64,000 nt of DNA, from NCBI RefSeq assembly GCF_021028975.2, contig NC_059428.1, positions 138,756,001 through 138,820,000 on the forward strand. Direction: 5' to 3'. The DNA is from Sphaerodactylus townsendi. Taxonomy: Eukaryota. Below are positions 1,204 through 42,716 of this stretch, in pieces (the first letter of the stretch is position 1; each line of letters opens with the position of its first letter). The notes under the pieces are model-generated. The model saw only the letters and a list, made by a program, of their open reading frames with translations, was not told the origin of the DNA and made no database searches. Both the position numbers and the translations under genes were made by a program.

Positions 1204-4200
1204 ACCAGCTAAAGATCTGGCAGCTGTGAAATCTACCATAATAAATTCGAGCAGCCACGCGGAGGCCCTGGCAGGTGCTGCAGGCAGCCGGACCGTCCGC
1301 TGGCTCCCCTTCCTCCCCCCATTGGCAAGCCTTGGCGATGCCCGGCACTCCGCTATTTAACAGCCAGTGTGCATCTAAGTCCCCACACCGTTTCCAGCCT
1401 TTCAGCTGGAGGGCAAGCGCACTGCACTTGCCTACGAATTCCTTTCCCAAAGTATGAACTCAGCGGCTGAGACCGTCTTTGAGAGAAGACCAGCAAGGAG
1501 AGTTGCCAGAACAGGGGGGAGCACTTCCACTCCTGAAGACGCTGTCAACATTTCCCCAAAAGACAGGGAGGAGGACCGCCGCCACACAGGAGAGCTGCCC
1601 CCCCCCCAGTCCAAAGATGACCAGGAACCAGCACCAGGCAGTACTCAGAGCTTGGCAGCATCTCTGGGAATGGAAGGGCTCCTTGGCTCCTCCTCCAGAG
1701 GGGGTGCGTGTGTGTGTGTAGTCAAGGATCCCAAGAAGGGAAGAAGGGGCTGTAGTAGAGGTGAATTGGGGCCCAGAAGAAGAAGCAAGGACAGCCCCCA
1801 GAGGCATACCTGGGGTAAATGGCGCCCAGAAATAAATTGTTTCCAGGATGCCCCCCAGGCTCTGCCCCCACCCCCGCCCCTGTCCCACCCCAGGCTCTGC
1901 TTCCCACTATGGACATGGGCAAGGTCTAGGGTGCCCACCCCCAGCCTCAGTGCTTATAAAAGAAGGTCTCCGAGGCTGGAATTGCAGTCTCTTCTGGCCT
2001 GCCTGGAGGAGAGGTCAGAAGAGACTGCAGGCTGCGAGCCCAGCTGGCAGGGGGGGAAGGAAGAGAGGGTGGAGTCCAGGGAAGGGTTGAGGGCGCCCGG
2101 GGACAAGGGGTACCCCTTGTCCCTAGGCAGATACGCCATTGACAGCCCCCCACCCCCTCCAACCTCTCGAGTGGAAACTCAGCCACAAGTCAGCTTCTCC
2201 CACTACAGATGATCCAATACTGCTCACCTGCAGCATAGAGCAAAAGGGAGCCATGCGCTGGACAAAACACCTGGCAGGCCCATCAGAATATCGGCCAGGA
2301 GAGTCTCAGAGGCAGCCCTGCTGTGGTAGGCCTAAGAACGCAAGAGCGGCCAGGAGGGCACACCTAGTCCACCAGCCATTAGCCCTGGAGAGCAAACAAA
2401 CTAGGGACAGAGGCTGAGGCCTTCCCTGGAGCCACTCCCCAGCACTGGTAGCCAAAGGGCCTCTTCCTCCCTATTTGCCTGCAGCCCCTGTGGCCTGTCT
2501 TCTGTGCCTCTGCCCCAATGCCCCTCCCTCACCCCACGGCAGGCAGAGCGGAGCACCGAAGAGCCCGTGGAGGGGCTGACCACTGTGCCTTCACGCAGCT
2601 CCTCTCCTGCTCGTTTCTGAAGAATGCAGAGCTAACGGAAGTCTGTGGTGGCCTCTGCCCCTTCCTAGAGAGAGTTTGCATCTGACCTGGAATTCCCTCA
2701 CAGGAGCCACCTGGAGCCAGTGAACCCTGCGAAGAAGCGGCCAAAATGCAACACACCTGACCCAAGGCAGCCCCACCTGGCCGGATCCCCCCAGGTTGCA
2801 GAACAAAGCTCTGCTTCCTCCTCACAGCCACCCAGAAGACATTCAAAGCAGGAAGCCCCCCCCCCCCCCCCCGGGTCAAACACACTAATAAACTCTGTAC
2901 CCAGGTCACTCTGCAGGCCCCACCCCAGCTCTGAACTGGAGGGTCTAGGAACTTTCCATTCCCCCCCACCCCCACCCCCACCCCAGTCCCCAGAAAGACA
3001 CACCCAAGAGAAGCTATTTTCAAGGGAAGACTGAAAAGGCCTCAGCCGCAATCTGACGGCAGAGGGGATGGTTGGCCAGGCCCCCAAATGCAAATTCTGA
3101 TACTCTGGGTGTTGGGAGAGAAGGACTTTATGCTGTTAAGCTGTTTCCTGCCTCATCCTACAGAGGGGGTTTTACGAGAGAGCCAGTGGCTAGAGAGGGA
3201 CCTAGGAATCGACACTTTTACTGTATCATGCTGGTGCTAGCCACCCGTGCACTCTGCTAACTCCGAATAGGAATAATCTCCAACTACCAGGAGCTCTTAT
3301 TCCCAACGCTGGGAAGCTCTTTGCTTCACCTGCATCCAGCTTCCATGGGGGGCTGAGCAGAGCTGTCACAGAACCCACCCACCCCACTCGCAGCTGCAGG
3401 GGCGAAGAGCGAAAGTGGGGAGCTCACAGGGAGCCTTGAGCCTGGCCCTCTTCTCTGCCCCAGAGGGAACGAGCACTGCACCGGGGGGTGGGGGTGGGGA
3501 TACAGTGTGCAAAATGCCCTCCTGGCCAGAATTATTTGCTTGGTGCACCAAGTCCCTTGCCAGGACCAGCCAAGTTGTTTGGCTGAGCCAGATGATGCAG
3601 GGTTCCTGGGCGCAATACCTGCCTGGACGGCACCCCAACCTTCAGGTGAAACTGATGCCAGGTGGGATAGGGGAATAAACCCCCTACCTGCTCCAGCAAG
3701 ACAATCTGGTGAGGGAGGGGGCTAGGTGCCACGCCAGGGGCAGGGGACCCCGGCGGCCCAGGGCAAAGCTCTTTTGCCCTCGCAAATGACAAAAGGATGC
3801 CCTTAAAAGGAGGAAATCTGCAGTGGCGACCGCGACTCTGTTGTGTCAGGGTGAGAAGGCAGCAGCTGAGCTGCCGTGGTGGGGGCGAGGGAGGTGCTGC
3901 GAGGGGCTGGGGGGTCCAATTACAGGCCTGTTTCCATACTTAGCCACTCTGCAGCACCACCGGCAGCAGCGGCGGCGGCAGCAGAGAATACAGAGCCCAG
4001 CCAGGGCAGCCGGAGAGACCAAATTAACTCAAGGGCAAGCAAGGGGAACATGGGCAGGCGCACGAAGTGGCCAGCTGCCTGGAAGGGCCCAGCAGACACC
4101 ACCGGGGGCCTGCCCCACCACTGTACGGCACCTGGACACGGGCCCTCAGCGGCTCACCCCTGGCACCGCAGGGGGACCGTATGGACAGCCCAGCACAGTG

Positions 4201-5450
4201 TCTCTGTCTACCAGATCTGGCCCCCTGCGCACTGCCTCTTTCAAAGGGCTTCTGGCCCCAAGGACCACCTCCCCGCAGATGCAGAAGTTCCCCCTCCCCA
4301 CAAGGCCCCCCTCCACCAGTAAAGGCTGAAGCGGCATCCCCATGCATGCTGGCTCCCCCGGTCCATCTAGGCCTGGGTTCTTTGATAAAATTAGGCCCAT
4401 TCCCTCCCCTCGGGGGCTCTTCTGCCCCCCAACCCCAATGGTGCAACGAGCAGCAAAGGAAATGCAGCCGAGAGCCTGCAGGTCGCATGGGGGCAAGCAG
4501 GAGACTCACGCAGCAGGTGGCCCCCCAGAGGAAGGCCAGCAGGGGGGCCCCGGAGGACCAGCGCAATCCCCTTACCTGCCGTTCCAAGGAGCAGGAGCGG
4601 AGCCACACAGCAGCAGAACAGCTGCACGCCCTTCATGGTGGCTGCCAGGAGACCTCTCCCCTCCCACGCTGATGTTGAGGCTCCGGAGGAGCAGGCAGCC
4701 GGCTGGCTTGGCTGCAGGGCCCTGACAACTGGTGCCTGCCACTGGAGCGCCCAAGGCCCCTCCCTGCTGCTCCGGCCCCAGCGTCACTCACAGGAACACA
4801 CCAGGCCCCAAATAGGGAGCGAGGCGGAGGGAGCCCAGGACCGGATGGGTGGGGGTGGGAGAAGTCACGGCCTGCAGTCTGTCTGCAGTGCAGTCCAAGC
4901 TGCTAGTCCTCCTGGACACGGGGCAGTGAGCCTGCGTGGTTTTCAAGGCAAGCAACTAACAGGGCTTTGCTGTGGTGACTGTGGACTCCCTTGGTGGCCT
5001 CCCGGCCAAGCACTTACCAAGGTCAGCCCCGCCTGGAGATCTGACAAGATCTGGATCACCTGAACGGGTCAAGTCGGCCCTTGAAAATGCACGTGGCCGG
5101 CCTTTACAGTGCTAGTGGACTTGTGCTCTGGCCCCAACAAGGAAGGGGGTGGGGGGACCCATTCAGACTTTCAGGAACGAGAGTTCAAAGTTAGGAAGGT
5201 TTGGGGGCAACTGTGAGCCTCAGGAAAAACTGCTTTCCCACTCCACCGGGGCAAAGTCAGGGCTGGGGCGGAGTCTGCTTGAGGTGGAGGGGGGTACGGT
5301 GCCATCTCCCCTCCTGTCACTGTGCTGCTTATCCGGGGGCCACTTACACACTTGAGCCTCTGTTAAAGCTCACATCCTAAAAATGTGTGTGTGCGTGAGA
5401 GAGATTGCATAAATCTTCAGATTGTATAAATCTTTTGTCTTATACTAAAG

Positions 5451-5585
5451 CATAGGTGTCAAACTCGCGGCCCTCCAGATGTTATGGACTACAGTTCCCA
5501 TCATCCCCTGCCAGCATGGTGCTGGCAGGGGATGATGGGAACTGTAGTCCACAACATCTGGAGGGCCGCGAGTTTGACACCTGAG
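5451..5585. mobile_element. Palindromic hAT MITE
   Basis: Near-perfect foldback; perfect 8-bp TSD TACTAAAG at 5443-50 and 5586-93. Confidence 0.88.
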
Positions 5586-6168
5586 TACTAAAGATTTCTG
5601 TGGAGATGCTCTTAAAATGACTAGGAAAAAACCCCATGATATACACACAGCACAGCAAAGACCCCGTTCCTTTTCTTGCTTCCTTTTACTTTTACTTACT
5701 CGCTGGTGGAGGAGCCTCCGCTTGTCATGCAGGAAGCCCAGGGTTCAACCCCTGTAAAAAGGGCCAGACAGGCTGTGTTGCGGAAGGAAGCCCTCTGCCA
5801 GAGACCCTGGAACTGGCTGCTGCCAGTTTGAGCAGATCCTGAAGAACCGAGGGCCGGATTCAGCCCCAGGCAGCTTCGCGTGAGCTCCTCCTCCATGGGT
5901 TCCTTGAGCAGAGAAATGGGGGTGCAGCCCAATCCCCAGCACAGAACGAGACAGCAGCACCCCCTGGTGGACAATGGCAATTTGCTTCTCTCCCCTCCCC
6001 TCTCCCCCCCCCTCCCAATATTCATGCTCCTGAATGTGAATATGGCAGCCTGTTTTCAGAGAGCCACATTGAGTGACCGAGGAGACCCGACATTTTCTCT
6101 GTCTGATAGGTAGGACTGGGCTGCACAAGCAATAATTTGTGTTGGGGACAAAAATGAAGGCATGAGCC

Positions 6169-6538
6169 CAGTGGTGGGATCCAAAAATTTTAGTAACAGG
6201 TTCCCATGGTGGTGGGATTCAAACAGTGGCATAGCGCCAACGGGGCTGGGCGGGACATTCAGGGGGCGGGGCATTGATGGGCAGGGCTGTGGCAAGGATG
6301 CAGCTGCTGCGCCGGTCGGTCCTTGGGTGGGAAACGAATGCACGCAGGTGCAAGCTGCCACACACGCCGGTGCACCTCCTGCTAGACTGCTTCAGGTTCT
6401 GCACGCCACTGCTGTGGAGCGGAGGAGGGGCAAAAATCACGTGGCAAAATCACCAATTAGTAACCCCCTCTCGACACACACAAATAATTAGTAACCTACT
6501 CTCGGGAACCTGTGAGAACCTGCTGGATCCCACCTTTG
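6169..6538. mobile_element. Non-autonomous hAT element
   Basis: TIRs cagtggtgggatcc / ggatcccacctttg; degenerate 8-bp TSD catgagcc/catttgcc. Confidence 0.7.
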
Positions 6539-6976
6539 CATTTGCCCCAGAGAGATACACCCCGTCTGCTCCTTCTGCAAAGGATCCACAATCAGGGGTT
6601 CTTCCCACACCACAACCGCTGGTGATGGCACTGTGGAAGGGCTCTGCCCTGCTCTTCAATCCCACCCGACTAAGAGGTCCTTGCAGCATCCGGGAAAATC
6701 CGCTCAAGCCCCCCCCCCCCCCCCCCCGGAAACACTCGACAGTGACTGGAACATCCTGAAAGAACGTAAAAAGTCAGTTCTGATATTGGAAAGGCAGATG
6801 GGTGTTTGAAGGGTGGATATTCTGGAAGTGAGCAGGCATCTGTGCCCTGGCTCTTTCCGGCCCTTCAGGCACATCTGGAAGCTGGGCTGGAAGGGGATTC
6901 CTTCAAGCTGCATCTTCAGCTGCCCGGGGGTGTGTGTGTGTGTCTAAACCAGCCTAAATACGCTTCTGGGGAACTG

Positions 6977-7237
6977 CTGGGTGGAAGCTTTAAAAGGGGC
7001 TTGGACAGATTGATGGAGGAGAAGTCGATTTATGGCTACCTATCTTGATCCTCTTTGATCTGAGATTGCAAATGCCTTAACAGTCCAGGTGCTCGGGAGC
7101 AACAGCCGCAGAAGGCCATTGCTTTCACATCCTGCATGTGAGCTCCCAATGGCACCTGGTGGGCCACTGCGAGTAGCAGAGAGCTGGACTAGATGGACTC
7201 TGGTCTGATCCAGCTGGCTTGTTCTTATGTTCTTATG
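6977..7237 (+). mobile_element. CR1 LINE 3' end
   Basis: tttaaaaggggcttggacagattgatggaggag...ggtctgatccagc...(ttcttatg)2 tail. Confidence 0.75.
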
Positions 7238-7412
7238 AAGCGTTGTCCTGGAAGGAACTGCTGGTAATAAATGTACATCCATTGCCCACAGACAGGTTGG
7301 CCCCCACAGAAGAGGAGCCTGTGTTACACCCCCCCCCCTCAATTTGCAGGGACTGTGAGATGCCCAAGGATGGAAGAACCCAGTCAAGGAGCTTAAAAAA
7401 CAAAGTACAAAC

Positions 7413-7418
7413 TTTATT
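7413..7418 (-). terminator. TFAP4 poly(A) signal AATAAA (3' UTR ~1.05 kb)
   Basis: TTTATT on + strand ~1 kb past the stop, in a U-rich terminal UTR context. Confidence 0.7.
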
Positions 7419-8442
7419 TTGTTTCTTTACAAAGGCACGTGCCTCTTTTTCCCACTTTTTTAACAAAATATAATAGCATCTCAATGAACACGAAGACCTG
7501 AAAATTGTAAAAAAAAAACAAAAACAACCCCTCCCCCCCCCCCAAACCCAAAACAGAGGAAAGTACTGAGAAGCCGCGGAGGCCGGGGAAGAACCTACCA
7601 AATACCACCAGGCTCTAAACATCACTGGCCTAGATCTACAGCCAAATTGGGGGTGGGGGTGTGGAGGGAGGGGGGGAATGGGGGGGACACAACCAAACGC
7701 TGCGCTCACAGAACAGAAAGGCTCACTGGGGGGGGGACCCCCCAGGACGGCGCAACCTTTAAAGGATGCTCCCTCCCAGATCGCGGAAAGGGCTGAAACC
7801 TGAACCGACCCCTGAGAATGGAGGGAAATGTGTCGTCCCGCCACGATGCAGAGGCCACTGGGGTGCAAGAAAAAGCTTGGCGGGGCAAAAATCACACACT
7901 CTGTGCTTGCTTGGAGGGGTCGCACTGGGAGGCAAACCCCTGCTAGCCCACTCCCCGCCCCTGCAGTGAACGGACCCTGAGGCAGGACTGCCCAGAGCTC
8001 TTCAACAGGGGGCTGTTCTTGAAGCCCGCCTATGGAGGGGGAACGAGGCCCAGGAAGAAGTCCATCTCCCGGGGACGCCATGGCTGGCGCCCAGAACCAT
8101 AATGGAGTGCAAAGCTTCAGATAAGTCACAGGAACCTGCAGGAAGAGTTCATGATCTCAGAGTGGCGACAGGTTCCGGATCAGTCCACCTCCGCACACAG
8201 GACAGGCCCCTGGAAAATTCCATTTCTCCCCCCATTCCACCCCACCCCCCTCGCCCAATGCTTGGCTTGCTTTGAACTGAAGAGGTGGTCTTTCGGCTGT
8301 CCAGGTTCTAGCGCTCCCGTGTACAGTATTGAAGGGTCATAAAAGAGACCCAAATTTCAAGGTATTTTGTAAAAATCTCAGCATACTCCTCTGCAACCCC
8401 CTCCTCTCACCCTCCCGCCCCCGCCCTGTCGCCAGGCCGGTG

Positions 8443-8604: not shown

Positions 8605-11600
8605 CTGGAGGTGGGGGGGGGGGGGAGAGAGCAGAGCAGATGAGGTGCTGGGGTCTGATGCTCAGCAGCTGCTCCTGAGGGGCCTACCAAGGCTTCCCCT
8701 GGGGCCCACAGTCGGCTTGGAAGAGGTGGGACACGAGTTTGGAAGAGGTGTGACACAATGCAGCCAGTGGCGGCGGCGGCAGAAATCCCTGGCTCAGGAG
8801 TCCACATTTCCAAGCCTCCACCTGGGCCAGGATCTCAGACAGCAGCCCTTCAGGCAAGCCGCCTGGTTATAATCCCCAGGCACAATACAAGGAGAGTCGT
8901 GGCTGAGGGGTCAGGTGGCCTGAAATAATGCATTCAAAAGTTTCTGCTGCTTTTTTTTATCCCCTTGCTTGTGAGAGAGCAAATTCCAAGCGAAGACGAT
9001 GACTTTGGATTTATGCTCCTGCCCCTTCTCTCCTGTAAGGAGACTCAAGGTGGTCTGCAAACTCCTCTCCCCTCCTCGTGAGACCCCTTGTGAGGCAGGT
9101 GACTGGCCAAGGTCACCCAGCAGGAACGCAGGAGCGGGGAAACACATCCAGTGGGGAATCAAAACTCGGTTCTCCAGATGAGAGCCCGTCTTCTCGTAAC
9201 CACGATACCTGGCTGGTTCTAGAACCAGAAATGCTATTCATTCTGAAGAGAAACAAAGATTGTTTCCCCGCCAGGCCTGGGTTTGTTGCTGATGGGGTCC
9301 TCCCCCCTCCCAGTTCCACGTGCCCTCCTGTGGCTCTTGTGTACCTTCCAGCATCTCTGCTGTCTGCAGTCTAAGCCGGCTTTACTACATAGGTTGTAGC
9401 AAAGCCAGGGTGGCGGCCTCCAGGATGGCTACAGGCCTTGCCCAAATTGCTGCGATTTCCCATCTGCAGCCCACCCACCCCCATGCCTTTTTGTTTATTA
9501 ATGTTTTTAAAACAGCGATTTGTCAATTGCCAATTAATCCCCCCCCCCGGGGGAGGGGGGTGTCTGTGTGGTGGTGGTGGTGGTGGTGGTGGTGGTGGTG
9601 ATGGGGAGCAATGGCCATTGCAGGGAAGGCGCAGCCTTGTTCTGCCTGCATTTGACTTGACAGCCACAGTGGGCGACAAGAACACCACAGAAGTTTGTTG
9701 CTGGGTCGAAGTGACTTGAAGCCCTTTGTTTCCTGATTTGGTGAGCAACTGAAAGGTTTTAACCTCTGGCAAAAGTTGCCATAATAATCACCTTCCCCCA
9801 GACTCTCCTCATGCACCAGGAGGAAGCTGGAGGTTGAAAGACCCCTTGCCTTATAGAGGCCCACTAAAAAACCTTCAAGCCTCCCTGGGCAACCGGGGGG
9901 GGGGGGGGGGGGAAGCTCTCTGTGGCCCAGACATTCTTCTAGAGCAGGGGTGTCAAACTCACGGCCCTCCAGATGTTCATGAACTACAATTCCCATCAGT
10001 CCCTCCCAACGTGAGCATTGGCTATGCTGGCAAGTGCTGATGGGAATTGTAGTTCATGAACATCTGGAGGGCCGCGAGTTTAACGCCTGTGTTTTAGAGC
10101 ATTCTACCACCCAAGCACAGTTGCCCAGACGTTAGTCCTCTACGCAAATTCTGTCCAAAAACTTGGGTCTTCCTGTGTGTGCATGTAAACCATTATCAAG
10201 TTGCAGCCAACTTATGGCAACCCTGTAGCGTTTTCAAAGCAAGAGGCAAACAGAGGGGGTTTTCCATTGGCGGCCTCTGCATAACAACCCTGGGCTTCCT
10301 TAACAGTCTCCCATCCAAGTCCCAACAACACCTGACCCTCCTTCGCTTCCAAGAGATCTGATGAGATCAAGTCAAGGCCTGTTGTCTTGCTACAACTTCC
10401 AGGTTTACTGGATAAAAATGTGAAAAGCAATTCAAATGCCCCCACGAATAACAATGATAATAAAAATCCCACATTCAATTGCAAGTAAACATAGTGGGGG
10501 AGCTGCAACTGGCCAGACTTGCCCACTAAATATGTATTAGGATGTTGTGGGGTTTCCGAGGTGTATGGCCGTGTCCCAGCAGCATTTTCTCCTGACATTT
10601 CGCCTGCATCTGTGTCTGGCATCTAAAGATGATCTTCTGAAGATGCCAGCCACAGATGCAGGTGAAATGTCAGGAGAGAATGCTACTGGAACACAGCTAT
10701 ACAACCCAGAAAACCCTCAACACCCTAGCGATTCCAGCCACGAAAGCCTTTGACAGTACAAATATGCTTTGTTTCTTTTTTTAAAAAAGAGACATGCAAA
10801 GGCTGCACACCGTGTCTCCCAGGACGTGTGAAGCAGTCCAGCTGTACGGAGGAGGAACGTTGCTTGAGGCCTGCCTGGGGAGCCGTCCCCGCCAGCATCT
10901 AGCTTGGTCTGTTTGATCCTCTGTCCGCTGCCTTTTGGGAAGGCACAGGATGTGACCTGCCGTTGGACTCTCCAAGAGCAGACCCTGCCCCCTGGAAAGC
11001 GGCCAATCCCTCACCCCCTTTACCTGAACGATGGTATCCAGGTTTTGCCTGGATGTTGAGATAGTGTTGATCACGGAGGACGGGCCCATGGTTACCACAG
11101 TGACGTGGTGGGAGGGCGGTGGGGCCGGCACAATCACGGTCGGGTGGTGGGTGGGTGCTGGAGGGCCGTGCACAGGCAAGAGCTGGAACAGAGAGAAAGC
11201 CGTTCAGAACTAGGGCAAGGAAGGGAGCTCGGGTGGGGCAAAGCAAGCCCCCTGAGAGAAGCCAGAGCAAGGGTTCTCTCCAAGTGACCCAACCCCCACA
11301 TGTGCCTGGGGCCGGAGGGGACTCGAGCCTTCCCACTGCCTTCAAGCAGGGCTCCTTGTCATGTGAAGTCTGAGGCTTCCTCCAATTTAACCCGTGGAAG
11401 GTGGCCAAGAGGTGCTTCATGCCTGGGGGGTTCTGAAATCCTGCAGAGGACCGTGATGCTCCTCAGACCCACTCAGCACCCCCCCCCCCAATCCAACACT
11501 GGTTCAGGAGAGACCCAAAGAGGCCCACCAGACCCCTAGAAACACCCCCACGTGTCCTCACATGACTGCACAAGAGAAGGGAGTTTGGGGTTATTTATTG

Positions 11601-14600
11601 GTGCTTCCGTAGATTTTAGCATAGGAAGGGGGGGGGGGGGGAGGCATCTTAAGGCTTTTGGCCTCAGCCTCCAGGATATCACCACTAATATGAGTGGCGG
11701 CAGGGGGGTCCCAGTCCTGCACCCTCTTTCCTGGAAAGCACAAATGTCACTCGCCCCATGCTCTCTGCTCCAAAGTGCCACAGAGTAAGGCAACCTTCCT
11801 GCAGGGCCACACAGCCTCAAAAGGAAAGGGCGGGATGGACTCCACTCACCTGGGTGTGGCTCTGCTGCTCCCGCGCCTGCTGCTGCTGCTGCACCTGTTG
11901 AGCAATCACCTTCAGCTTCTCCGGGTACATGTGAGCCTCCAGAGAGCGCACCTGCCGGCCGAGTGGGGAGAGCCTTGTCATGTGTGCCCCAGAGAGGGAC
12001 CATGGATGCTCAAGCTCTCAGCAACTCGCAGGGGACCCCGCCAACCCCCCTCCCCAACTTTCAGTGCTGAGAAGAAAACATTGTTCCAAGGAACGCATGC
12101 CAGAGAGGCAGGGCTGCCTTCAGAATCCCACACAGGCTCGTGACGAATTTTCAAGCTTCCAATCCCAGCCAGGCAGTTCTCCTTCTGTGCCCCCCCCCCC
12201 TTCCCACTGCACAGGCACTTTTTGGCCCCCCAAATAAAGGCAGAAGTCAGACTGAGCATGAAGCTTGGCTGCGAGGCCTTGTGGAAGGAGGGGCTGGGCT
12301 CCTTCTCCAGCCCCCCTCTGTTCCTTTTGTGGGTGCAAAGGGAACCCCAAAAGTAGCTCCATAACAAGCCCCCCCTTGTGAGAGCCCCTCACAAACAGAA
12401 GAAGAAGAAGAAGAAGAAGAAGAAGAAGAGTTTGGATTTATATCCCCCCTTTCTCTCCTGTAGGAGACTCAAAGGGGCTTACAATCTCCTTGCCCTTCCC
12501 TCCTCACAACAAACACCCTGTGAGGTAGGTGGGGCTGAGAGAGCTCAGGAAAGCTGTGACTAGCCCAAGGTCACCCAGCTGGCGTGTGTGGGAGTGCACA
12601 GGCTAATCTGAATTCCCCAGATAAGCCTCCACAACTCAGGCGACAGAGCTGGGAATCAAACCCGGTTCCTCCAGATCAGAGCGCACCTGCTCTTAGCCAC
12701 TGCTCTTAGCCTCTAAGCCATAGCACCTCGCATGCTTTTGGGCCCAGGAAAGGATTTCCCGAACCGGCCCTGTGCTGCTCCCTCCAACCCCTAGCAGTGG
12801 CTCCTGCCTGCCTCCCCGCCCCCAGGCCTCACCTGCTCCTCCAACATCATGCGGACGGAGCGCTCCTTGTCCAGCTGCTGGCGAAGCTCAATCATCTCCC
12901 GGCGCAGGTCTTCGGCCTTCTCGTCCTCCCAGATGTCCGGCGACCCGATGCCCTCGTCCTTGTCCTCTGCCCTCCGCCGCTTCGGGGAGGAACCGCTGAA
13001 CTCCTGCCAAGCAGAATGAGCTGTGGCTGAGCGGCTGCGAGGACGGCAGAAGGAGGGGAGGGGGGAGAAGCCCACCGGGGCCCTTGCGGGAAGGTGGGGA
13101 GTGGGCCGCCAGAATGGGGGAAAACAGGAGCTCCCCCGTGGCAGCCAAGATACCTGGATGAAGCGCTTGAGCTGGGCGTTCTGCTGAAGCAGCCGGGTCT
13201 TCTCCTGCTCCAGAGAGAAGATGTACTCTGCCGTCTGCTGGAGAATGGCTGCCTGCCAGAGGGAAGAAGCAAGTGTGTGGGAAGAGCCGCACTCGCCTCA
13301 GGCTCCCCCTGCAAGGCTGATGGAGGTCGCAGAGATGAGGCTCTCACAGCCCCAGGGCATTGATCCGCTGTTCTGTGCCAGAGCTGACTTCTGTCGACAA
13401 ACTGCCCCAGCCTTCCCTTTGACCCGGACAGCCTAGCGGAACCACAGCACACAGGACATTTGCCCAATATGAGCCCAACGGCTCAGAAACAAGTACCTTG
13501 AGAAACCCAGGCTCCTTGCGTTTGGTGCACTGACAAGTATACCACACCGAACACTGAACGTGCCCAGCCCCTGAAGCCACCCACATGGAAGAAGGGGCCT
13601 GCTGGAACTCTCCGCAGTGCAGGAAGCTGGCCTCCAGAGCATCTGCAGGTCTTGTCTTCACATTGCCAGGAAGGGGAGACATTTAGGCACCTGCCACCCC
13701 TCGGACTCCACCTTACCTTGCTGAGCTTCTCCCCGTCTGTGTGAGGAATGAGGGTTTTCAGGGACTGGAAGCCGGCATTGATGCTCTGCATGCGCCGCCT
13801 CTCGTTGCTGTTGGCAATTTCCCTGCGTATCCGCCGCTCCTGGTCTCGCTGTGTCTCTGGGGTCAGTGGGATGTTGGCCAGGCTGCAGAGGAGGCCGGCA
13901 AGTTAGGAAGCAGGCCCCAGATGGACCCCTGGCCTTCAGACCAGGATTACCCCTCCCCCCAGGCTCAGACCCTCTAAAGAGCAGCAGCCCCCAACAGCAG
14001 CGAGACGGGGCCCAAAACGTGACTCCAGGAGTGGGCGAGGGGACGCAAAGACACTTCCCCTGGCCAGCCTTCAGCCAACCAAACAGCCTCTGCAGTATAG
14101 AACACTTCACTTGGAAGAGCAACTTGAAACAGGAATATTTATGACTGCACAGAGTGACTTCTGTTTGCCACTGTGAAAACTCACAGGCACCCAAATTCCA
14201 GGTCCAGGCAAAGTAAACTTCTTCAACAGTCCCCAGCCAACAGCCTCCTCTGCTCGGGCTGGCCAAGCACCCTCACTGATGGCCGTGCCCCCTCGCTCAC
14301 GGAGACCTGACCCATGCCAACAAAGAGGCCAGTGTGCCCACAATCCCCTTGCTTGATCCCCGAAAGCTGTTCCAGGCATTGCTGCTTGCAAACTTTATTT
14401 ATTTCAAACCTTTGCACGCTGCCTGTTCAAGGCAACTCATCAATGAATGGGTGAAATTGGGAAAATGTACAAATCAATAAAATTTGGAAGCATTCAAGAC
14501 CCAGCCCAGGAAACTGCACCAAATTTCCTGCTCCTGTGACCTGAAGCTAACCTGGCAATTCTCAACTTCGGGGCCCATTACTGGATATTCCCTGCTTGAC

Positions 14601-25790: not shown

Positions 25791-26469
25791 TAACGATGCC
25801 CTCCAAAATCCATACAGATGAGAAAAACAGGATTTGGGAGTGGGGGCGGGGGGCAGAATGGCTGGCCTTCTGGCCTTGCTGCATTCTCAGGCAAGAGGAA
25901 ACAAGGGATCTGAGAGTTTCAGAGCATCAAGGACTCCCCCAAAGCCAAGGCCAAAAGCACCTGGCAAGAATGTCTCAAAGAGAGCTAAGCAGAAGCCTCC
26001 AGCGCCCACTAGTGGCGGAAGAAGTCCACTGCTGCCTCCTGGAAGCCAGATCGGAAACCCTCATTCCACTGTAGGTTACCAGGCGCCATGTGTGGATTCT
26101 CTAACTTTAGAGGTCAATGCCCAGAACCAGCTTGGGAGAATTAAGCCTAGGCTACCTTGGGCAACTGACACGTTCACCCCTCAGGGGTGAGCTCAACATG
26201 TGATTTTGAGATCTGTACACCAGGATAGTGGGCAGGCAGAGTCAAAATGCCTCCAATTAGCAACAGAACAGCCAGATCTTTTCCAAATCAATTTTTAGAA
26301 TTTGAAAGTGGGGACTGAAAAGGTAACAAAAGCATAAGAACAGCACAATTGTTGGGATCAGAAGTTCCATGGGGGAAGGGGAGAGGGCCGAGTCTCTGGC
26401 TGGGTGGGAATTCTGCCTTTTGGGGAGCCCGGGGGGGGGGGGAATTTAACCAAGGAGAAAGGGGAGCTA

Positions 26470-26661
26470 GGGTCTTGTGGGTTTTCCAGGTTGTATGGCC
26501 ATGCCCTAGCAGCATTTTCTCTTGATGTTTTGCCTGGATCTGTGGCTGGCATCCTCATGCAAGCAAAACATCAGGAGAAAATGCTACTGGAACACAACCG
26601 TACAACCCGGAAAACCCACAACACCCTCGTGATTCCAGCCATGAAAGCCTTCGACAGTACA
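26470..26661. mobile_element. Penelope-like foldback copy
   Basis: Same family as 10538-10760. Confidence 0.65.
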
Positions 26662-26901: not shown

Positions 26902-27185
26902 AGAAGAGTTGGATTTATATCCCCCCTTTCTCTCCTGTATGAGAATCAAAGGGGCTTACAATCTCCTTTCCCCTCCCTCCCACAACAAACACCCTGTGAG
27001 GTGGGTGGGGCCGAGAGAGCTCCGAAGAACTGGGACAAGCCCAAGGTCACCCAGCTGGCATGTGTTGGAGTGCACAAGCTAATCTAGTTCACCAGATAAG
27101 CCTCCACAGCTCAAATGGCAGAGCAGGGAATCAAACCTGGTTCTCCAGATTAGAGTGCACCTGCTCTTGACCACTGCACCATTGT
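26902..27185 (-). mobile_element. tRNA-derived SINE
   Basis: Same family as 12397-12720; additional head fragment at ~27360-27430. Confidence 0.8.
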
Positions 27186-27490
27186 AGTGACAGGGACCCA
27201 TTCAAAAGAAGAGGGAAGGAGAGTCAGTGGGTCTCCTGACTGTGACTGAGTGCGCAGTGGGGGCTTCCCACTAGGCAGAGTGGTGGGCAAAAGGGCTGGC
27301 AGCAGGGTGGGGGGGAGCCATTCTGACAAGATCAGTAAAAACAATGGGGTCCACCTGGCTGCTTGAGTGGGGAATCAAATCTGGTTCTCCAGATTAAAGT
27401 ACACCTGCTCTTAACCGCTACACCACACTAGTTCTCCGCATAGGCGCAGCTGGGTGCCTGGCTTTGTAAGCCCCCTGAGGATGCAGAGAT

Positions 27491-28196
27491 TTTAAGATTA
27501 TTTCTAGGGGAAGGATGACACTGTATAAAAATGTTAACCCTAAGATGAAATCAAGTTATTGAGAATCGGTATACTGAGGAAGAAACCTTTGAAAACGCAT
27601 TCAGACGCGTGGTGCGATTCTATACCGGATTCTCAGTTTTAATGTACCATCGATGTATGGACTCAAGACACAGGATACACTAGCTCTGTTGTGAAGTTCC
27701 ATTTAGGAATCACATAAAATGGAAACATCAAATTTCCCTTGGAATTGAACATTGTACAGTCTCATATGGACTTATGAACATTTGCTTTACAATATATGTG
27801 ATGAGAATCTGTGAAGTTCCATTTGGGAACCACATAAAAAATGGAAATGTAAAAATTTCTTGGAACTCATCAATTTGAAGTCTCATATGGACTTTTGAAT
27901 ATACACTTTACAAATGAAATGATGAAGATTGTACATTGATTTGTTTTATTGACACTGGCATGTAAATGTATTGCACTTTATTACTTTCATCAATAGGTTA
28001 TTAGAATAGGGTTAGAATTGAAATAATTGTGTTAATATTTATATGAAAAATATTTGAAAAAATAATTTTGTACAAATGTTGTTGGAATGATTTATTACAA
28101 TTGTCATATATACATAAGTCCAAGTTAGTGTGCCAATTTGATTTGTTCATTCCTGTCATATTATACTTGGCACGCTAGTTTCAATCTTGTTTGCTT
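27491..28196 (+). mobile_element. AT-rich non-coding retroelement carrying the hammerhead (Penelope-like pLTR / retrozyme-like)
   Basis: Sharp AT-rich island flanked by gatgcagagat (27480-90) / gatgcaaagat (28197-207); internal ~120-bp tandem duplication; 3' hairpin; no ORF. Confidence 0.55.
27560..27635 (+). ncRNA. Type I hammerhead ribozyme motif
   Basis: Stem I tgagaatcggtata(27560-73)/tataccggattctca(27621-35), 14 bp with 1 bulge; core CUGAGGA 27574-80; short stem II 27581-90; GAAA 27591-94; stem III a-cgca...ugcg(a)u; cleavage triplet UUC ending at 27620. Confidence 0.7.
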
Positions 28197-29399
28197 GATG
28201 CAAAGATCTCATCAGTGAATCAGTTTCCCACCCAAGAGTTTGGCCACTGAGGAGACCCTCATGCCCCCCCCCCAGCAAATAATTGCTAGCTCCCTAAAAT
28301 GGCTTTCAAAAGGATTTCTCCCAAGACGGAGTCACAGCGAATAGAACACCTGTAGGGAAGGGTGACAGCTAAGGGAGTGGAGTGCTACCTCGCAGGGCCG
28401 TTGCAGAGGAGAAAGGAAGATCATCACATTTGCACTCCTTCAAGTAAATTAGTTTCATTTGTTTTATGCACACTGAGCGCAGGTCTCAAAGCACCAGCTC
28501 GCCAGAAGGAAGAGGCAAGCCCCACCCCTGTGCTGCCCTGGTCAAGTCCAGCACTTGGGGGCCGGACTGGGAAAGGGAAGTCAGAGGGCCAATCGGATTC
28601 CAGGGATCTATCGAGAAGGGGGCTGTTTTTACAGGCACCAGTGAAGCAGCAGCACAGGGGGATGCAGAAGCACACAACTTGAGCCGGGCTGCACCCAAGA
28701 AAGGAGGATACTTGTGGGGCAGCCACCCCATGGCCAGGCCCTCTGGAATGGCAATGGGCTCCACACCCAGTCACAGTGACCCGTTGACTTCGGCAAGAGT
28801 CCCGTGGCCCTGCAATGTTTGGGTTGGTCCTCAGAGAGGGGCCTGAACCTTTTTCAGTTTGTTGAGTTCATCCGTAGGTCAATAAAACATTCTGCTCTTG
28901 TTTTGTCTCAGTGGTCAGCCCAGTGCTCTGAGTACACCCACTGCTCCAGGCCAAATCCCAGCTATCCACCAGCAGAGGTTGGCAAAGATTCTTCCGTGCC
29001 CAAGACTGTGGCAAGTAGCCAAGGGGGAAGAAGGGCCCTGCTCTGCCAGGGGACAATGCTGGATGGAGTCAGCCAAGCAAGGGACCCTTTCCCTACAATG
29101 CCTCCCAAGGGACTTGCTGCCCTCCATCCACTAGGTAATATTGCCCAGCCTGGCATCTGGCTCATGCACCTGCTGCCTGTTCAGCTTCGCCTGTGTTACT
29201 GCAAGCACCTGGGCATTTTCATTTTCTCTCTACCTGCCTCGCAAGCGTGCTTCAGGTTTCCCTACATGCTGAAGGGATTCATTCGGCCACAGGAGGAAAG
29301 AAGCAGGGGTGCCACCTCCGGTCCTGGAGCCATGGCAAGAACTGACCAGGGCGATGCACAGTCCACCTCTCCCGCGTTTTGCACCCAGGCCCTCCAGCT

Positions 29400-38740: not shown

Positions 38741-41700
38741 GTGAGTGCAGGGCCCAGGGGGGGGGGGGAGCAGAGTGGGGTGCAATCTTGGGTTGAGGCT
38801 GGCACAAACCTTTGCCTCTGGCTGGCACGGAGGGTTATGGGATGGGGTGCCTCAGGGGCTGCCAAATACCCTCCATTTCCTCCCCCGCCCCATGCCTCTA
38901 TTGTGCAGCAGGTCTCTTGGCACACTCCAAAGGACGTGAGGACTTCTCCTCGCCCCCCACCATTGACCTGAGCCTGTCTCCACCTTCAGGCCTGGACTCC
39001 CCCAGCGGCAGCACCTCCCTCTCCCCGGACAGACCCAGCAGCGGGGAGCTGGTGAGCTCCGCCACCCTCCGAGTGAGTTGCTCTTCTGTGGCTCTATGTG
39101 TGTGTGTGTGGGGGGGGGGAGAAGGGGGAGCGGGGGAAGGGGCCTAAGCAAAGCAGGGTGAATGGAGGCCTGGCCAGTGCCTCCAAGATCCTAATTTGGC
39201 CCTCTGAATTACTACGGCACTGACCGTATGGGGTGCTTCAGGGACTCCAGGTGGACACTCTGCTCTCCCTCCTCCTCCTTCCCCCCACGGAGTGCAAAGT
39301 GGTTTAAAAATGCTGCTGTGCTGCTCCCTACAACAGGCCTGCAAGGTAGGGCATGCGTAAACATGTCCTCTGGTCCCCCTGCACAGGAGCTCCAGTCCCT
39401 GCGCTACATCGAAGGCCTGCAGCGCTCCTTCCAGTTCTTCCTGCCCCTGAGCTCTGGGGGCATGCTGCACCTGCCTGCCTCGGCTTTCCTGGGCCCCCCC
39501 AAGGAGAAGCGGCTCTCCCCAGACCTCCCCCTTCAGAAGCAGCTGGTGTGCCGGTGGGCCAAGGTGAGAGAGGACTGGGTGCATCAAGCACTGCTGGCGG
39601 GTACCTCTGTTCTCCCCACAAGCCACCAAATGCCCCCTTCTTCCTCCTGCCCCCCACAGTGTAACCAGCTCTTTGATCTGCTGCAAGACCTTGTGGACCA
39701 CGTCAACGACTTCCACGTCAAGCCCGAGAAGGACACCGGCTACTGCTGCCACTGGGAGGGATGTGCGCGCCACGGCCGGGGTTTCAATGCCAGGTGAGCC
39801 TGTTCCCGGGGGCCCCTTGCCATGCGACTGCCCAGCTGAGCCCGGAGGGGTGGAATGAGCCACTGCTGATGTGGAGGTTGGCTTGAGCTGCTGCGGAGTA
39901 GGGGGGGAGCCAGGGTCACGTTCCACTCAGCCATAAAACCATGTAACCTCGCAGGGTTGTAGTAAGGGGCCCCCCCTCGCTTCAGCCCCAGCCCCCATCA
40001 GCCAGGATACTCATAAGGAGCTGCCAAGATGCGTCCCTCCTTCCCTCAAGCACCCCCAATGCAGAAGCACTGCTGTGCCTCCTGTCCAGGGAGACTTGTG
40101 TCCAAGGAGGAAGCCCTGGGGGTGGCGGACACAGCCAGGGGTGTGTGTGGGGGTGTGTGTTGGCGTAGCTTAGGCCCGGTTCTTTCCCAAGAGCCTATTT
40201 TTAACATCGGGCCTCTGCCTGACTCAGGAGCTGGCCTGCCTGCCTGCCTTGGGGGGGCCCAGGCGGAGCTGTGAGGGGGGCACCAGGCGGAGAGTCACTT
40301 TTTGAACGGCCTGAAAGGGGGGGGGCAGCCACCATGACCTGGCTGGCCAAAGTAGCCCCTCTCTTCGTCAGATCTTGGAAGCCAAGCAGGGTCTGCCCAG
40401 GTTGGCACTTGAATGGGCGACCCCCAAGGAAGTCCAGGGTTGGGGTGCGGAGGCAGGCGGGGAAACCACCTCTGTTAGTCTCTCGCCTTTAAAACCCCAC
40501 GGATGGCGAAAAAACAAAATGAAAGAGGGGAACCTGGCCCAGTGCCCTCCCTGTGGCTCGGAGGCGGCACTTTGGGCACCTTTTGGGTGGAGGAAAAGGG
40601 GAGAGCAGCGGCCGCTCATTCTTCCCCTCCTGCAGGTACAAGATGCTGATCCACATTCGCACCCACACCAACGAGAAGCCGCATCGCTGCCCCACCTGCA
40701 ACAAAAGCTTCTCCCGGCTGGAAAACCTCAAGATCCACAACCGCTCCCACACAGGTGAGTGGCCAGGTGGGGTGATTAGCTTTTTGTGCGCCATTGCCGT
40801 GGCGGCAGCAGGCCTTCTGTCTCTTCCTCGCACTGTGGCATCCGGCCAGCACGCGTGTGCACGCTTCGCTTGGGATTGCGAGGGTCTGCCAGCTGCCACA
40901 ATTGGTTCCCTTTGTTGCTTGGGAATGCGCCAAAGCACTGGGTGCGGGGGAGTTGCAAACACTCCCACTTGCTGAATCCATCCATGGTGCTCAGCCCCCA
41001 GCCCCTCCTGAGTCTCTGCTGCCTCAATGGCTGTGCTTGGGGACAACCCCAGTGGAACAAGGGATTCCCTCCCGCATCTTGTTAAAAGGGAATCCATCTG
41101 TAATTCTGATAGTACAAAAGAATAAAGGGCTGAGTTTGGTTCTCTGAAGTTTTAACCGGCAAACCAGACAGAATGCTGGGAAGAAACTTTTTTTATCTTT
41201 CTCTGAGAATAGAAAAGATTCTCTTTAGAGCAAGAGAAAAAAAAATATACAGGCATGAAAAAATGGGTCAAACAATTACTGGGAAGATAAATGCTAAAAT
41301 TATCAAAGTTTCTAGCATCGCTTAATCATGTCAGAGCCAGCAATAGCTTTAAAAGCCAATCAGGTTTCAGCTATTGCTGCATTTAGGGGTTATTCAAGCG
41401 GCCAAATTATCTCACCTGGTCTTCTTATGAGACTTCCATCCAGGGAAATCTGGTTTGCTTGTCACAGTTGTGCGTGTCTGTAGTCCTCTTTCTGGACAGT
41501 TATCTTTCTCTCAAGTCTGTTCTAGCATAGTCATCGAGTTATCATCAACTGATTGATTCTTAAATATGAGATAATCAAAGTAAGGGCCAATCAGCAGAAC
41601 ACAGATGAGTTACATCTGATATGGCAAGATAAGAAGGCCAATCTCAGCTGCAATTAATCTAACTTTTCTGCAAGTGTTTCAATTAACCGTCAAAGTCAAA

Positions 41701-42716
41701 AATAGCTTCAAGCAAACACGGTTTACAGACAGCTTAAAAGTGTGTGAACTCTCAGTTAATTTCTAAGCTCTGCAAGAAAAGCGTGGGGATGGTGTAGCTA
41801 CCACACCAGTGCCAGGCAGGGGGTCCCAGAGTGGCACAAGACCCCCACCCCCACCCTGCCAGGGCTGGGATCCTGCCACACATGCTCTTCTCAGGTGTGT
41901 CTGTCCTCTCACCCCTCCCTCGCAGGCGAGAAGCCCTACGTCTGCCCCTACGAGGGCTGCAACAAACGCTACTCCAACTCGAGTGACCGCTTCAAGCACA
42001 CGCGCACCCACTACGTGGACAAGCCCTACTTCTGCAAGATGCCCGGCTGCCATAAGCGCTACACCGACCCCAGCTCCTTGCGCAAGCACATCAAGGCGCA
42101 TGGCCACTTCATCTCCCAGGAGCAGCAGGAGTTGCTGAAGCTGCAGCCGCCTGCCAAGGCCCACCCCGCCGGTGCCACAGACTTGCCCTTCATCAGCGGG
42201 GCGCAGCTGGTCATCCCCAACCCTGCCGCCCTTTTTGGGGGCCACAGCCTGCCTCTGCCCCTGCCGCCTGCCCCACTGGACCTCAGCACCTTCACCTGCG
42301 GTGGGATTGGAGCTGCCGCGCTGCCAGGCCTGCCCGGGCCCATGATGGCGCCCCTGAACTTGGCCAAGAACCCCCTGCTCTCCTCCACCTTCACCGCCAG
42401 TGGCCTGGGACTGCCCATCGTGTCTCTGCTTGCCGGGGCTTCTGCCAAAGCTGGGGCCGAGAGGGGTCACCTGGGCTGCGGCCCCAGGCCAGGTAGAGGC
42501 AGCTGCCCGCAGGGCCCCCAGAGCTGCAAGGAGGCCAACGAGCGGGCTGAGCTGGCCAGGCGTCGGTCCCCCCCAGAGGGCCTCTCGCTGCTTCCAGGGG
42601 CCGTCTTGGACCTGACAACGGGCGTGAACTCGGGGGGAAGCACCGACACCCTGCCTCCGGGCTGGGTGGTCATCCCGACGGGCTCCGTTTTGCCGAAGCA
42701 AGCCGTGGTGAACTGA
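38560..42716 (+). CDS. GLIS2: GLIS family zinc finger 2, full gene span, 6 coding exons, ~521 aa
   Basis: join(38560-38740,38909-39072,39387-39563,39660-39793,40636-40754,41926-42716) = 1566 nt. Start [18 protein letters not shown], five Gli-type C2H2 fingers, C-terminus [19 protein letters not shown]. Confidence 0.97.
38909..39072 (+). CDS. GLIS2: GLIS2 coding exon 2 (alternative start 38912)
   Basis: [41 protein letters not shown]...ATLR|gtgagt; tandem CAGCAG acceptor. Confidence 0.9.
39387..39563 (+). CDS. GLIS2: GLIS2 coding exon 3
   Basis: [21 protein letters not shown]...KQLVCRWAK|gtgaga, 177 nt. Confidence 0.95.
39660..39793 (+). CDS. GLIS2: GLIS2 coding exon 4 (ZF1-ZF2)
   Basis: [44 protein letters not shown], 134 nt. 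Confidence 0.96.
40636..40754 (+). CDS. GLIS2: GLIS2 coding exon 5 (ZF2-ZF3)
   Basis: [39 protein letters not shown], 119 nt. Confidence 0.96.
41080..41766. mobile_element. Possible solo LTR in GLIS2 last intron
   Basis: Abrupt AT-rich 690-bp island starting tgttaa and ending ttctaa, three CCAATC motifs, no ORF; TSD not clean. Confidence 0.45.
41926..42716 (+). CDS. GLIS2: GLIS2 last coding exon (ZF4-ZF5, C-terminus)
   Basis: [59 protein letters not shown]...AVVN*. Confidence 0.96.

What the first reader, a model, noticed from the sequence alone, without database searches (positions are those of the whole stretch)
27560..27635. Well-formed type I hammerhead ribozyme between TFAP4 and GLIS2
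Seen: every element of the hammerhead fold is present in order on the + strand. There is a 14-bp stem I with one bulged G (tgagaatcggtata / tataccggattctca), the core CUGAGGA, a short stem II, GAAA, stem III (AACGCA...UGCG-A-UU) and a UUC triplet directly abutting stem I, predicting cleavage after C27620. Stem II is weak: either AGA/UUU or, with an extra A after A9, G-U/A-U/A-U, which could reflect CpG decay of an ancestral G-C pair. Known: hammerheads occur in Penelope-like pLTRs and retrozymes. Inference: this is a retroelement-borne self-cleaving RNA ~1.8 kb upstream of the GLIS2 CpG island and in GLIS2 orientation, so it could cut upstream or read-in transcripts.
Basis: partly seen in the sequence, partly recalled or inferred. 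Interest (0 to 1): 0.85.

Follow-up and report, generated by a model that had tools for sequence, protein, structure and literature searches.

The report
Hammerhead-like module in a reptile repeat
A 76-base stretch with the signature letters of a hammerhead self-cutting RNA sits inside an old copy of a roughly 700-base mobile repeat in a reptile genome; it may be a decayed ribozyme of a known retroelement kind, but one of its three stems is very weak and nothing shows that it cuts or affects the gene next to it.

Summary
The letters are there as described: a 14-bp stem I with a bulged G27627, CUGAGGA at 27574-80, GAAA at 27591-94, a 6-bp stem III with a bulged A27617, and C27620 before stem I.

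"Well-formed" is too strong.
- Stem II is three weak pairs.
- RNAfold never forms stem II (P about 0.001) and prefers a fold that buries G5-G8.
- No Rfam hammerhead model matches, even at E<=10 on 106 nt.

The motif lies in a 706-bp AT-rich insertion (27491-28196) flanked by an 11-bp target-site duplication. Contigs from four related organisms show it is a multi-copy family, and the motif bin is its most abundant part. This restores G10.1-C11.1 behind an extra A. They also carry U at 27584, which leaves only two Watson-Crick pairs in stem II.

A relaxed descriptor finds about 2 comparable motifs per 1.5 Gb of random sequence.

My reading is a decayed copy of a retroelement-borne type-I hammerhead variant (about 0.55). 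The main rival is a chance motif on a conserved structured module (about 0.35). No RNA data exist, so the proposed effect on GLIS2 is unsupported.

The parts
27480..27490 (.). left copy of the 11-bp target-site duplication (GATGCAGAGAT)
   Evidence: alignment; 10 of 11 identical to 28197-28207
27491..28196 (+). 706-bp AT-rich, ORF-less, multi-copy insertion that carries the motif
   Evidence: TSD. Summed contig depth is far above the unique flank in four runs. A paralogous contig's match starts at 27503. Contigs of organisms B and C run from 28166/28169 across the right junction into the flank, so those species share the insertion. No open stretch longer than 64 aa.
27560..27573 (+). stem I, 5' strand
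   Evidence: pair probability about 1.0
27574..27580 (+). CUGAGGA, which fits hammerhead core positions C3-A9
   Evidence: unique in the window
27581..27590 (+). putative stem-loop II. The window copy reads AGAAACCUUU. Most other copies read U at 27584 and C at 27590.
   Evidence: never predicted to pair (P<=0.001)
27591..27593 (+). GAA, which fits G12-A13-A14
27594..27619 (+). stem-loop III: AACGCA / UGCG-A-UU, A27617 bulged, 13-nt loop
   Evidence: The CGCA/UGCG part has P 0.67-0.83. The A15.1-U16.1 pair has P 0.01-0.03.
27620..27620 (+). C17; predicted cleavage between 27620 and 27621
   Evidence: position relative to the core letters only; no RNA ends available
27621..27635 (+). stem I, 3' strand, with G27627 bulged. 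Most other copies read A at 27626, which gives a 1x2 internal loop five pairs from the core.
27690..27913 (.). 121-nt tandem repeat, 1.9 copies, inside the element
   Evidence: no significant similarity to the motif or its flanks
28197..28207 (.). right copy of the target-site duplication (GATGCAAAGAT)

Best explanation
The 76 nt are a mutated copy of a hammerhead-type (type I, stem I open) module. The module belongs to a multi-copy, non-coding, TSD-flanked repeat family of about 700 bp in this reptile lineage, most plausibly a non-autonomous retroelement of the retrozyme or Penelope-dependent kind.

In the family's usual form the module has these features:
- the canonical core letters;
- an extra A after A9;
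- a very short helix II (G10.1-C11.1, A-U, then a U.U mismatch);
- a stable helix III;
- a helix I interrupted by a small internal loop five pairs from the core.

Inferred, not shown: transcripts of master copies would cut themselves after C17 to trim or release the element RNA.

The window copy is an old insertion shared by related species. It has lost C11.1 through CpG decay (C27590 to T) and has two further private changes. It is therefore probably slow or dead as a ribozyme. No evidence shows any effect on the GLIS-type gene downstream.
For: - All invariant hammerhead letters are in the right order and abut three helices.
- The motif is a property of a repeat family, not of unique DNA. This shrinks the search space for a chance match from gigabases to the few megabases of family consensus. 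I estimate about 0.01 expected, using the rate.
- Nearly all other copies read C at 27590, which restores the canonical C11.1-G12 step and G10.1-C11.1, as predicted in advance.
- The extra base 5' of helix II is a described trait of Penelope-element hammerheads and of some viroid hammerheads (PMC4209133; De la Pena & Flores 2001 as cited there).
- The bin holding the motif (27570-27626) has 2-5 times the summed depth of its neighbours in all four runs (about 4 times or more in X3, X5 and X6), and more distinct contigs. It is therefore the most conserved or most widely shared part of the family.
- Low GC, a TSD longer than 4 bp and the lack of LTRs or an ORF fit metazoan non-LTR retrozymes (PMC7229834). 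Such elements and Penelope elements are reported in reptiles (bioRxiv 10.64898/2026.07.22.740005; PMC4209133).
Against: - No Rfam hammerhead model matches, even at E<=10 on 106 nt. The same test also missed the Penelope-type fold-back at 10538-10760, so its weight is limited.
- Helix II is 3 weak pairs here and 2 Watson-Crick pairs in most copies.
- Thermodynamic folding never forms helix II. It prefers GAGG/CCUU in the window copy or GAAG/CUUC with majority letters, and both bury G8 (with G5-N7 in the window copy, with A9 in the majority version).
- The architecture (long helices I and III, tiny helix II) is the reverse of Penelope min-hammerheads. It also differs from canonical metazoan type I motifs, which have helix I of 6 bp, helix II of 4 bp and helix III of 1-2 bp (PMC4209133).
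- Only one motif per element was seen, with no tandem partner.
- There are no covariation data and no RNA data.
- A relaxed descriptor finds comparable motifs at about 2 per 1.5 Gb of random sequence.
Confidence: 0.55

Rival explanations
1. The hammerhead letters are a coincidence. The conserved module is a three-way or hairpin structure with another role in the repeat family, such as a recognition structure for the mobilising reverse transcriptase or a promoter or packaging signal. It could also have no role at all.
For: - All Rfam hammerhead models are negative.
- Helix II is not predicted for either version, and competing hairpins bury G8 and neighbouring core residues (G5-N7 in the window copy, A9 in the majority version).
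- The majority letter U27584 removes a helix II pair.
- The relaxed descriptor gives 2 hits per 1.5 Gb of random sequence at stem I >=14 and stem III >=6.
- Two other loose hammerhead-like hits occur in this one window. One of them was created by the insertion junction itself.
Against: - At the stringency actually observed (stem I 16, stem III 8, stem II 3 by the same counting) there were 0 hits in 1.5 Gb.
- The family's usual letter at 27590 moves the motif towards the canonical hammerhead rather than away from it.
- cmscan and ARAGORN recognised no alternative RNA family.
Confidence: 0.35
2. The copy is an active ribozyme that the host has co-opted. It cuts upstream or read-in transcripts before they reach the GLIS-type promoter.
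For: - It has the same orientation as the downstream GLI-type zinc-finger gene.
- It lies about 1.8 kb upstream of the GC-rich block that starts near 29.4 kb.
- Related species share the insertion, since contigs of organisms B and C run across the right junction.
Against: - This copy carries the C11.1-to-U change and differs from the family's usual letters at about 6-7% of positions, like a neutrally decaying insert.
- No RNA run holds the locus.
- Hundreds of sister copies lie elsewhere in the genome.
- There is no sign of stronger conservation at this locus.
Confidence: 0.03
3. The 706-bp unit is a DNA transposon or MITE, and the 14-bp inverted repeat is a DNA-level feature rather than an RNA structure.
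For: - The - strand folds at least as well as the + strand (z -3.89 against -2.95).
- A short imperfect inverted match (AAGATT....CTAG) lies near both ends of the element (read directly).
Against: - No terminal inverted repeats were reported at the element ends.
- An 11-bp TSD is unusual for most DNA transposon superfamilies (my own knowledge).
- The inverted repeat is internal, 70 nt from the left end.
Confidence: 0.05

Closest known systems
Non-LTR retrozymes of metazoans (type I hammerhead; Cervera & de la Pena 2020, PMC7229834; Li et al. 2026 preprint 10.64898/2026.07.22.740005)
   Same: Non-coding, low-GC repeats with a TSD longer than 4 bp and no LTR, PBS or PPT. They carry a type I hammerhead and are reported in four of five reptile genomes sampled. 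Many families exist mostly as monomers.
   Different: Those elements are defined by tandem units with two or more hammerheads, and vertebrate ones have a very short helix III (1-2 bp) that works in dimers. Here one motif sits in a 706-bp unit. Helix III is 6 bp with a 13-nt loop, and helix II is only 2-3 pairs.
Penelope-like element min-hammerheads in pLTRs (Cervera & de la Pena 2014, PMC4209133; Poseidon of Anolis, PMC11167929)
   Same: Retroelement-borne type I topology, abundant in reptile genomes, with an unpaired base at the 5' end of helix II. Penelope-type fold-backs lie in this same window (10538-10760 and 26469-26660).
   Different: Penelope min-hammerheads have a large helix II (6-8 bp), a short helix I (4-5 bp) and no helix III, which is the opposite proportions. 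BLAST found no sequence similarity between this element and the window's Penelope fold-backs.
Hammerheads of fungal and protist Penelope elements and of bacteria (PMC4209133)
   Same: Type I motifs with a large, stable helix III and no recognisable loop-loop contacts, active as monomers.
   Different: A different host range. No sequence relation was tested.
CChMVd (+) hammerhead with an extra A between A9 and G10.1 (De la Pena & Flores 2001, cited in PMC6155905 and PMC4209133)
   Same: An extra nucleotide after A9 that is compatible with catalysis.
   Different: A plant viroid type III ribozyme with a normal helix II.
Rfam Hammerhead_1 / HH9 / HH10 (amniote intronic hammerheads)
   Same: Core letters and type I topology.
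   Different: No match to any of these covariance models at E<=10. Those motifs are single conserved intronic copies, not repeat-borne.

Membership tests
Hammerhead ribozyme (type I) | Core C3-U4-G5-A6-N7-G8-A9 directly 3' of a helix I strand | tested here: met
   CUGAGGA at 27574-27580, abutting A27573
Hammerhead ribozyme (type I) | G12-A13-A14 followed by the A15.1-U16.1 pair and H17 (not G) abutting helix I | tested here: met
   GAA 27591-93, A27594/U27619, C27620. The letters fit, but the A-U pair has P of only 0.01-0.03 in folding.
Hammerhead ribozyme (type I) | Helix II closed by G10.1-C11.1 and long enough to be stable (4 bp in canonical metazoan motifs) | tested here: not met
   The window copy has A-U/G-U/A-U, or G.U/A-U/A-U after an extra A. 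Most other copies have G-C and A-U only, then U.U. Pair probability is <=0.001.
Hammerhead ribozyme (type I) | Helices I and III present, with the strand ends in helix I | tested here: met
   14-bp helix I and 6-bp helix III, each with a single bulge
Hammerhead ribozyme (type I) | Match to the curated covariance models (RF00163, RF02275, RF02277, RF00008, RF02276) | tested here: not met
   No hit at gathering score or at E<=10 on 601 nt and 106 nt. The control Penelope fold-back was also missed.
Hammerhead ribozyme (type I) | Compensatory changes in the helices and invariant core among relatives | not testable with these tools
   Only per-position majority letters from contigs were available. 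No paralogue sequence could be fetched.
Hammerhead ribozyme (type I) | Site-specific self-cleavage leaving 5'-OH and 2',3'-cyclic phosphate ends | not testable with these tools
   No RNA run holds the locus. All runs laid were contigs, and no molecule ends were reported.
Non-LTR retrozyme | Tandem units, each with a hammerhead (two or more motifs, to release a unit-length RNA) | tested here: not met
   There is one motif in the element, no second copy in the window, and the internal 121-nt repeat is unrelated. Tandem arrays elsewhere in the genome were not examined.
Non-LTR retrozyme | Non-coding, low GC, variable TSD longer than 4 bp, multi-copy | tested here: met
Penelope-like element pLTR | Sequence continuity with a Penelope RT/GIY-YIG ORF or with a known pLTR | tested here: inconclusive
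   No similarity to the Penelope-type fold-backs in the window. No Penelope consensus library was available.

The most novel reading that the evidence does not exclude
The module is a working, monomeric type-I hammerhead of unusual build: a bulged A after A9, a two-pair helix II, and long helices I and III. It would define a so-far undescribed reptile family of non-autonomous, hammerhead-carrying retroelements with hundreds of copies. The ribozyme would be the family's most conserved part, possibly also moving as the roughly 93-96-bp inserts noted elsewhere in this genome.
Probability: 0.3. Interest if true: 0.45.

Novelty: new member of a known kind. Interest (0 to 1): 0.3.

Why it matters
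If the family's module does cleave, it adds a structurally atypical hammerhead to the vertebrate catalogue: a minimal helix II and a stable helix III, so presumably active as a monomer. It would also add a reptile lineage to the retrozyme and Penelope story. It would show that current covariance models and descriptors miss such variants.

For this locus the practical message is modest. The copy is an old, mutated insert, and nothing supports a role in GLIS2 regulation.

The check also gives a calibration for the scan. Loose hammerhead descriptors hit random sequence at about one per genome, so stem II quality and family evidence should be required before calling a hammerhead.

Tried and rejected
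- **Rfam cmscan.** I ran the whole window at gathering score, 601 nt at E<=10 and 106 nt at E<=10. No hammerhead or other ribozyme family matched, only chance-level snoRNA and miRNA hits.
- **Sensitivity control.** The Penelope-type fold-back at 10450-10800 matched only miRNA-hairpin models below their thresholds and no hammerhead model.
- **Other copies in the window.** None were found.
- **Exact-pattern scans.** Scans of metagenome contigs and viral contigs with the core plus helix II and III letters, allowing either letter at 27584 and 27590, gave 0 hits.
- **Protein route to paralogous contigs.** A search with the 44-aa open frame across the motif found no candidate.
- **Earlier scan notes.** Look-ups by sequence and by relatives were blank.
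- **tRNA-like reading of the module.** ARAGORN found nothing.
- **Motif flanks as degenerate units of the internal 121-nt tandem repeat.** Alignment scores were within the shuffled range.
- **A second hammerhead on the - strand at 28215 down to 28164** (CUGAUGA, a 6-bp helix II, GAAA). I rejected it. Its core lies in host DNA beyond the TSD, so the motif was assembled by the insertion junction, and its helix I has only 4 pairs.
- **Protein Atlas look-up to name the zinc-finger gene.** The machine was busy twice.
- **RNA evidence.** No listed run is on record as RNA, and all four runs laid were contigs. Transcript ends at 27620/27621 could not be examined.

Full report
**What is in the sequence**

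On the + strand, 27560-27635 reads UGAGAAUCGGUAUA-CUGAGGA-AGAAACCUUU-GAA-AACGCA(13-nt loop)UGCGAUU-C-UAUACCGGAUUCUCA.
- The two outer arms form 14 pairs with G27627 bulged.
- AACGCA/UGCG-A-UU forms 6 pairs with A27617 bulged.
- The letters CUGAGGA, GAA, A27594/U27619 and C27620 sit where C3-A9, G12-A14, A15.1/U16.1 and H17 of a type I hammerhead belong.

**Is it a well-formed hammerhead?**

It is not well formed by the tests available.
- Stem II is A-U/G-U/A-U, or G.U/A-U/A-U after an extra A27581. As an isolated hairpin it has no predicted stability.
- The hammerhead fold of the 76-mer scores -12.4 kcal/mol against -23.0 for the MFE. The MFE pairs GAGG 27576-79 with CCUU 27586-89 and so buries G5-G8.
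- In the ensemble the stem II pairs have probability <=0.001 and the A15.1-U16.1 pair 0.03.
- The - strand folds at least as well as the + strand (z -3.89 against -2.95). The folding signal is therefore that of an inverted repeat.
- None of Rfam's hammerhead covariance models matches at gathering score, nor at E<=10 when only 601 nt or 106 nt are searched, although chance hits down to 7 bits are listed.
- I give this negative limited weight. The same test on the Penelope-type fold-back at 10538-10760 also returned no hammerhead model.

**Chance**

I used a relaxed descriptor that admits what is seen here: CUGANGA, 0-1 extra base, stem II >=2 pairs including G-U, GAAA, stem III >=3 with one bulge, H17, and stem I with one interruption.
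- In the window it finds only this site above stem I of 6 pairs.
- In 1.5 Gb of random sequence (GC 0.42) it gives 2 hits at stem I >=14 with stem III >=6, and none at stem I >=16.
- The window copy scores 16/3/8 for stems I/II/III by the same counting.
- Extrapolated, that is a few hundredths to a few chance motifs per reptile genome. This is negligible for one window but not for a scan with 277 hammerhead notes on this genome.
- The window shows how easily loose matches arise. A CUGAUGA...GAAA motif on the - strand at 28215-28164 is put together from host DNA, the target-site duplication and the end of the insertion.

**The surroundings**

- The motif lies 70 nt inside an AT-rich, ORF-less block.
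- The block is bounded by GATGCAGAGAT (27480-90) and GATGCAAAGAT (28197-207), a 10-of-11 target-site duplication. The insertion is therefore 27491-28196, 706 bp.
- It contains a 121-nt tandem repeat of 1.9 units at 27690-27913, which is unrelated to the motif.
- Upstream are two copies of a very abundant tRNA-derived SINE (27121-27188 and 27365-27432) and another Penelope-type fold-back (26469-26660).
- A TFAP4-type bHLH exon is on the - strand near 13.8 kb.
- GLI-type five-finger exons are on the + strand at 39.2-42.7 kb.
- The motif is thus intergenic, in the orientation of the downstream zinc-finger gene. It lies about 1.8 kb before the GC-rich block.

**Evidence from other genomes**

Ten public runs from six coded organisms hold parts of the stretch, and none is on record as RNA. 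I laid the contigs of four runs (organisms A-D) at >=80% likeness.
- The family is multi-copy. Summed depth over about 27505-28205 is tens to hundreds of times that of the unique flank 28254-28700. In X5 it is 3,000-8,000 against about 36-95, in X3 800-2,000 against 21, and in X6 20-460 against 8. The small run X1 is only 2-10 times its flank. Summed depth is not an exact copy number.
- The bin 27570-27626, which is the core with stems II and III, is the maximum in every run. It holds 32,278 in X5, 6,417 in X3, 2,391 in X6 and 376 in X1. That is 2-5 times its neighbours (about 4 times or more in X3, X5 and X6), with more distinct contigs. The module is therefore the most conserved or most widely shared part of the family.
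- A paralogous 961-nt contig of organism B matches only 27503-27635.
- The insertion is old and shared. Contigs of organisms B and C start at 28166/28169, inside the element's last 30 nt, and run across the right junction into the flank.
- The window copy differs from the letters that nearly all other copies carry at 27541, 27543, 27556, 27584 (A; others U), 27590 (T; others C), 27626 (C; others A), 27636 and further positions downstream. This is roughly 6-7% over 27513-27690.

**What the majority letters mean for the model**

It gives the canonical C11.1-G12 step and a G27582-C27590 pair, provided A27581 is an extra base after A9.
- An unpaired base at the 5' end of helix II is described as usual for Penelope-element hammerheads and is known from a viroid hammerhead (PMC4209133; PMC6155905).
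- A27626 turns the perfect stem I into 5 pairs, then a 1x2 internal loop (G27568 / A27626-G27627), then 8 pairs. Type I hammerheads carry an internal loop at about that height, where it contacts loop II (PMC4209133; PMC6155905).
- U27584, however, removes the third helix II pair. The family's helix II is then only G-C and A-U, followed by U.U.
- With majority letters RNAfold still never forms helix II. It gives a rival GAAG/CUUC hairpin (27579-82 / 27587-90), which swallows G8 and A9, a probability of 0.30.
- Tertiary and non-canonical core contacts are not modelled by such folding, so this counts against the hammerhead reading without being decisive.

**Weighing the evidence**

Because the motif is a property of a family consensus, the relevant chance space is the few megabases of repeat consensus. 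At the rate I estimate an expectation of about 0.01, against the whole genome for a motif in unique DNA. Two further results favour a real, conserved hammerhead-derived module: the majority letter at 27590 moves towards the canon, and the abundance peak falls on the motif.

Against it stand the marginal helix II, the negative covariance models, the unfavourable thermodynamics, and an architecture unlike any vertebrate retroelement hammerhead. Canonical metazoan motifs have helix I of 6 bp, helix II of 4 bp and helix III of 1-2 bp. Penelope min-hammerheads have helix II of 6-8 bp and no helix III (PMC4209133). Covariation is also completely lacking, because I could not fetch paralogue sequences.

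My odds are:
- about 0.55 that this is a decayed copy of a genuine hammerhead-type module;
- about 0.35 that the letters are a coincidence on a structured module with another or no role;
- about 0.25 that this particular copy, with G10.1.U11.1, still cleaves at a useful rate.

**Mechanism proposed (inferred)**

Master copies would be transcribed through the module. The three-way junction would fold with stable helices I and III. The core would cut after C17 (27620 here) and define one end of the element RNA before reverse transcription. This is the role proposed for retrozyme and Penelope hammerheads (PMC7229834; PMC4209133). For the Anolis Poseidon element, cleavage was not needed for insertion in vitro, and no reads ending at the site were found (PMC11167929). 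Even a real motif therefore need not leave visible ends.

**The GLIS2 idea**

There are no RNA data, the copy decays like neutral DNA, and sister copies are scattered genome-wide. I rate co-option at about 0.03.

**Comparison with known systems and novelty**

Retroelement-borne type I hammerheads in reptiles are known (PMC4209133; PMC11167929; bioRxiv 10.64898/2026.07.22.740005). If real, this is a new member with an unusual build. If not, it is an ordinary repeat with a chance motif.

Other first-stage notes in the same genome describe 504-529-bp ribozyme-carrying units and 93-96-bp hammerhead inserts. They may be the same family, but I could not inspect them.

**Limits**

- Majority letters were used only position by position and for one 85-nt fold inside a script.
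- No consensus of the element was built.

Noticed in passing
window 28164-28215 (- strand): A hammerhead-like string, CUGAUGA, then a 6-bp helix II (GAUCUU/AAGAUU), then GAAA. It is assembled across the right insertion junction, with its core in host DNA beyond the TSD, and its helix I has only 4 pairs. It shows how easily loose descriptors are met by chance.
   Followed up: partly
window 26469-26660 and 10538-10760: Two copies of the same fold-back repeat, with arms of about 71 nt at 82% complementarity. The copy at 10450-10800, the one searched with cmscan, scores 40-53 bits against several miRNA-precursor models (below their thresholds) and matches no hammerhead model.
   Followed up: partly
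window 27121-27188 and 27365-27432: Two 84%-identical copies of a tRNA-derived SINE segment. Its summed contig depth is 10^5-10^7 in four related organisms, far above any other repeat in the stretch. Many contigs join the two copies, skipping the DNA between them.
   Followed up: no
window 27690-27913: A 121-nt tandem repeat of 1.9 units at 79% match inside the 706-bp element. One repeat bin (27741-27797) has the lowest depth of the element, which suggests a variable number of units among copies.
   Followed up: partly
window 13700-13810 (- strand); 39195-42713 (+ strand): A bHLH exon (…RREIANSNERRRMQSINAGFQSLKTLIPHTDGEKLSK) and three exons with GLI-type zinc fingers (best PDB match five-finger GLI, E 8e-28). 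They fit a divergent TFAP4 / GLIS2 gene pair. The gene names rest on my recollection and not on a naming search.
   Followed up: partly
window 27574-27595: In the best-holding run (X1, organism A) the near-identical contigs stop at 27573 and resume at 27596. The only contigs covering the gap carry the family's majority letters. The private letters A27584 and T27590 of this locus were therefore not confirmed by an independent data set.
   Followed up: no
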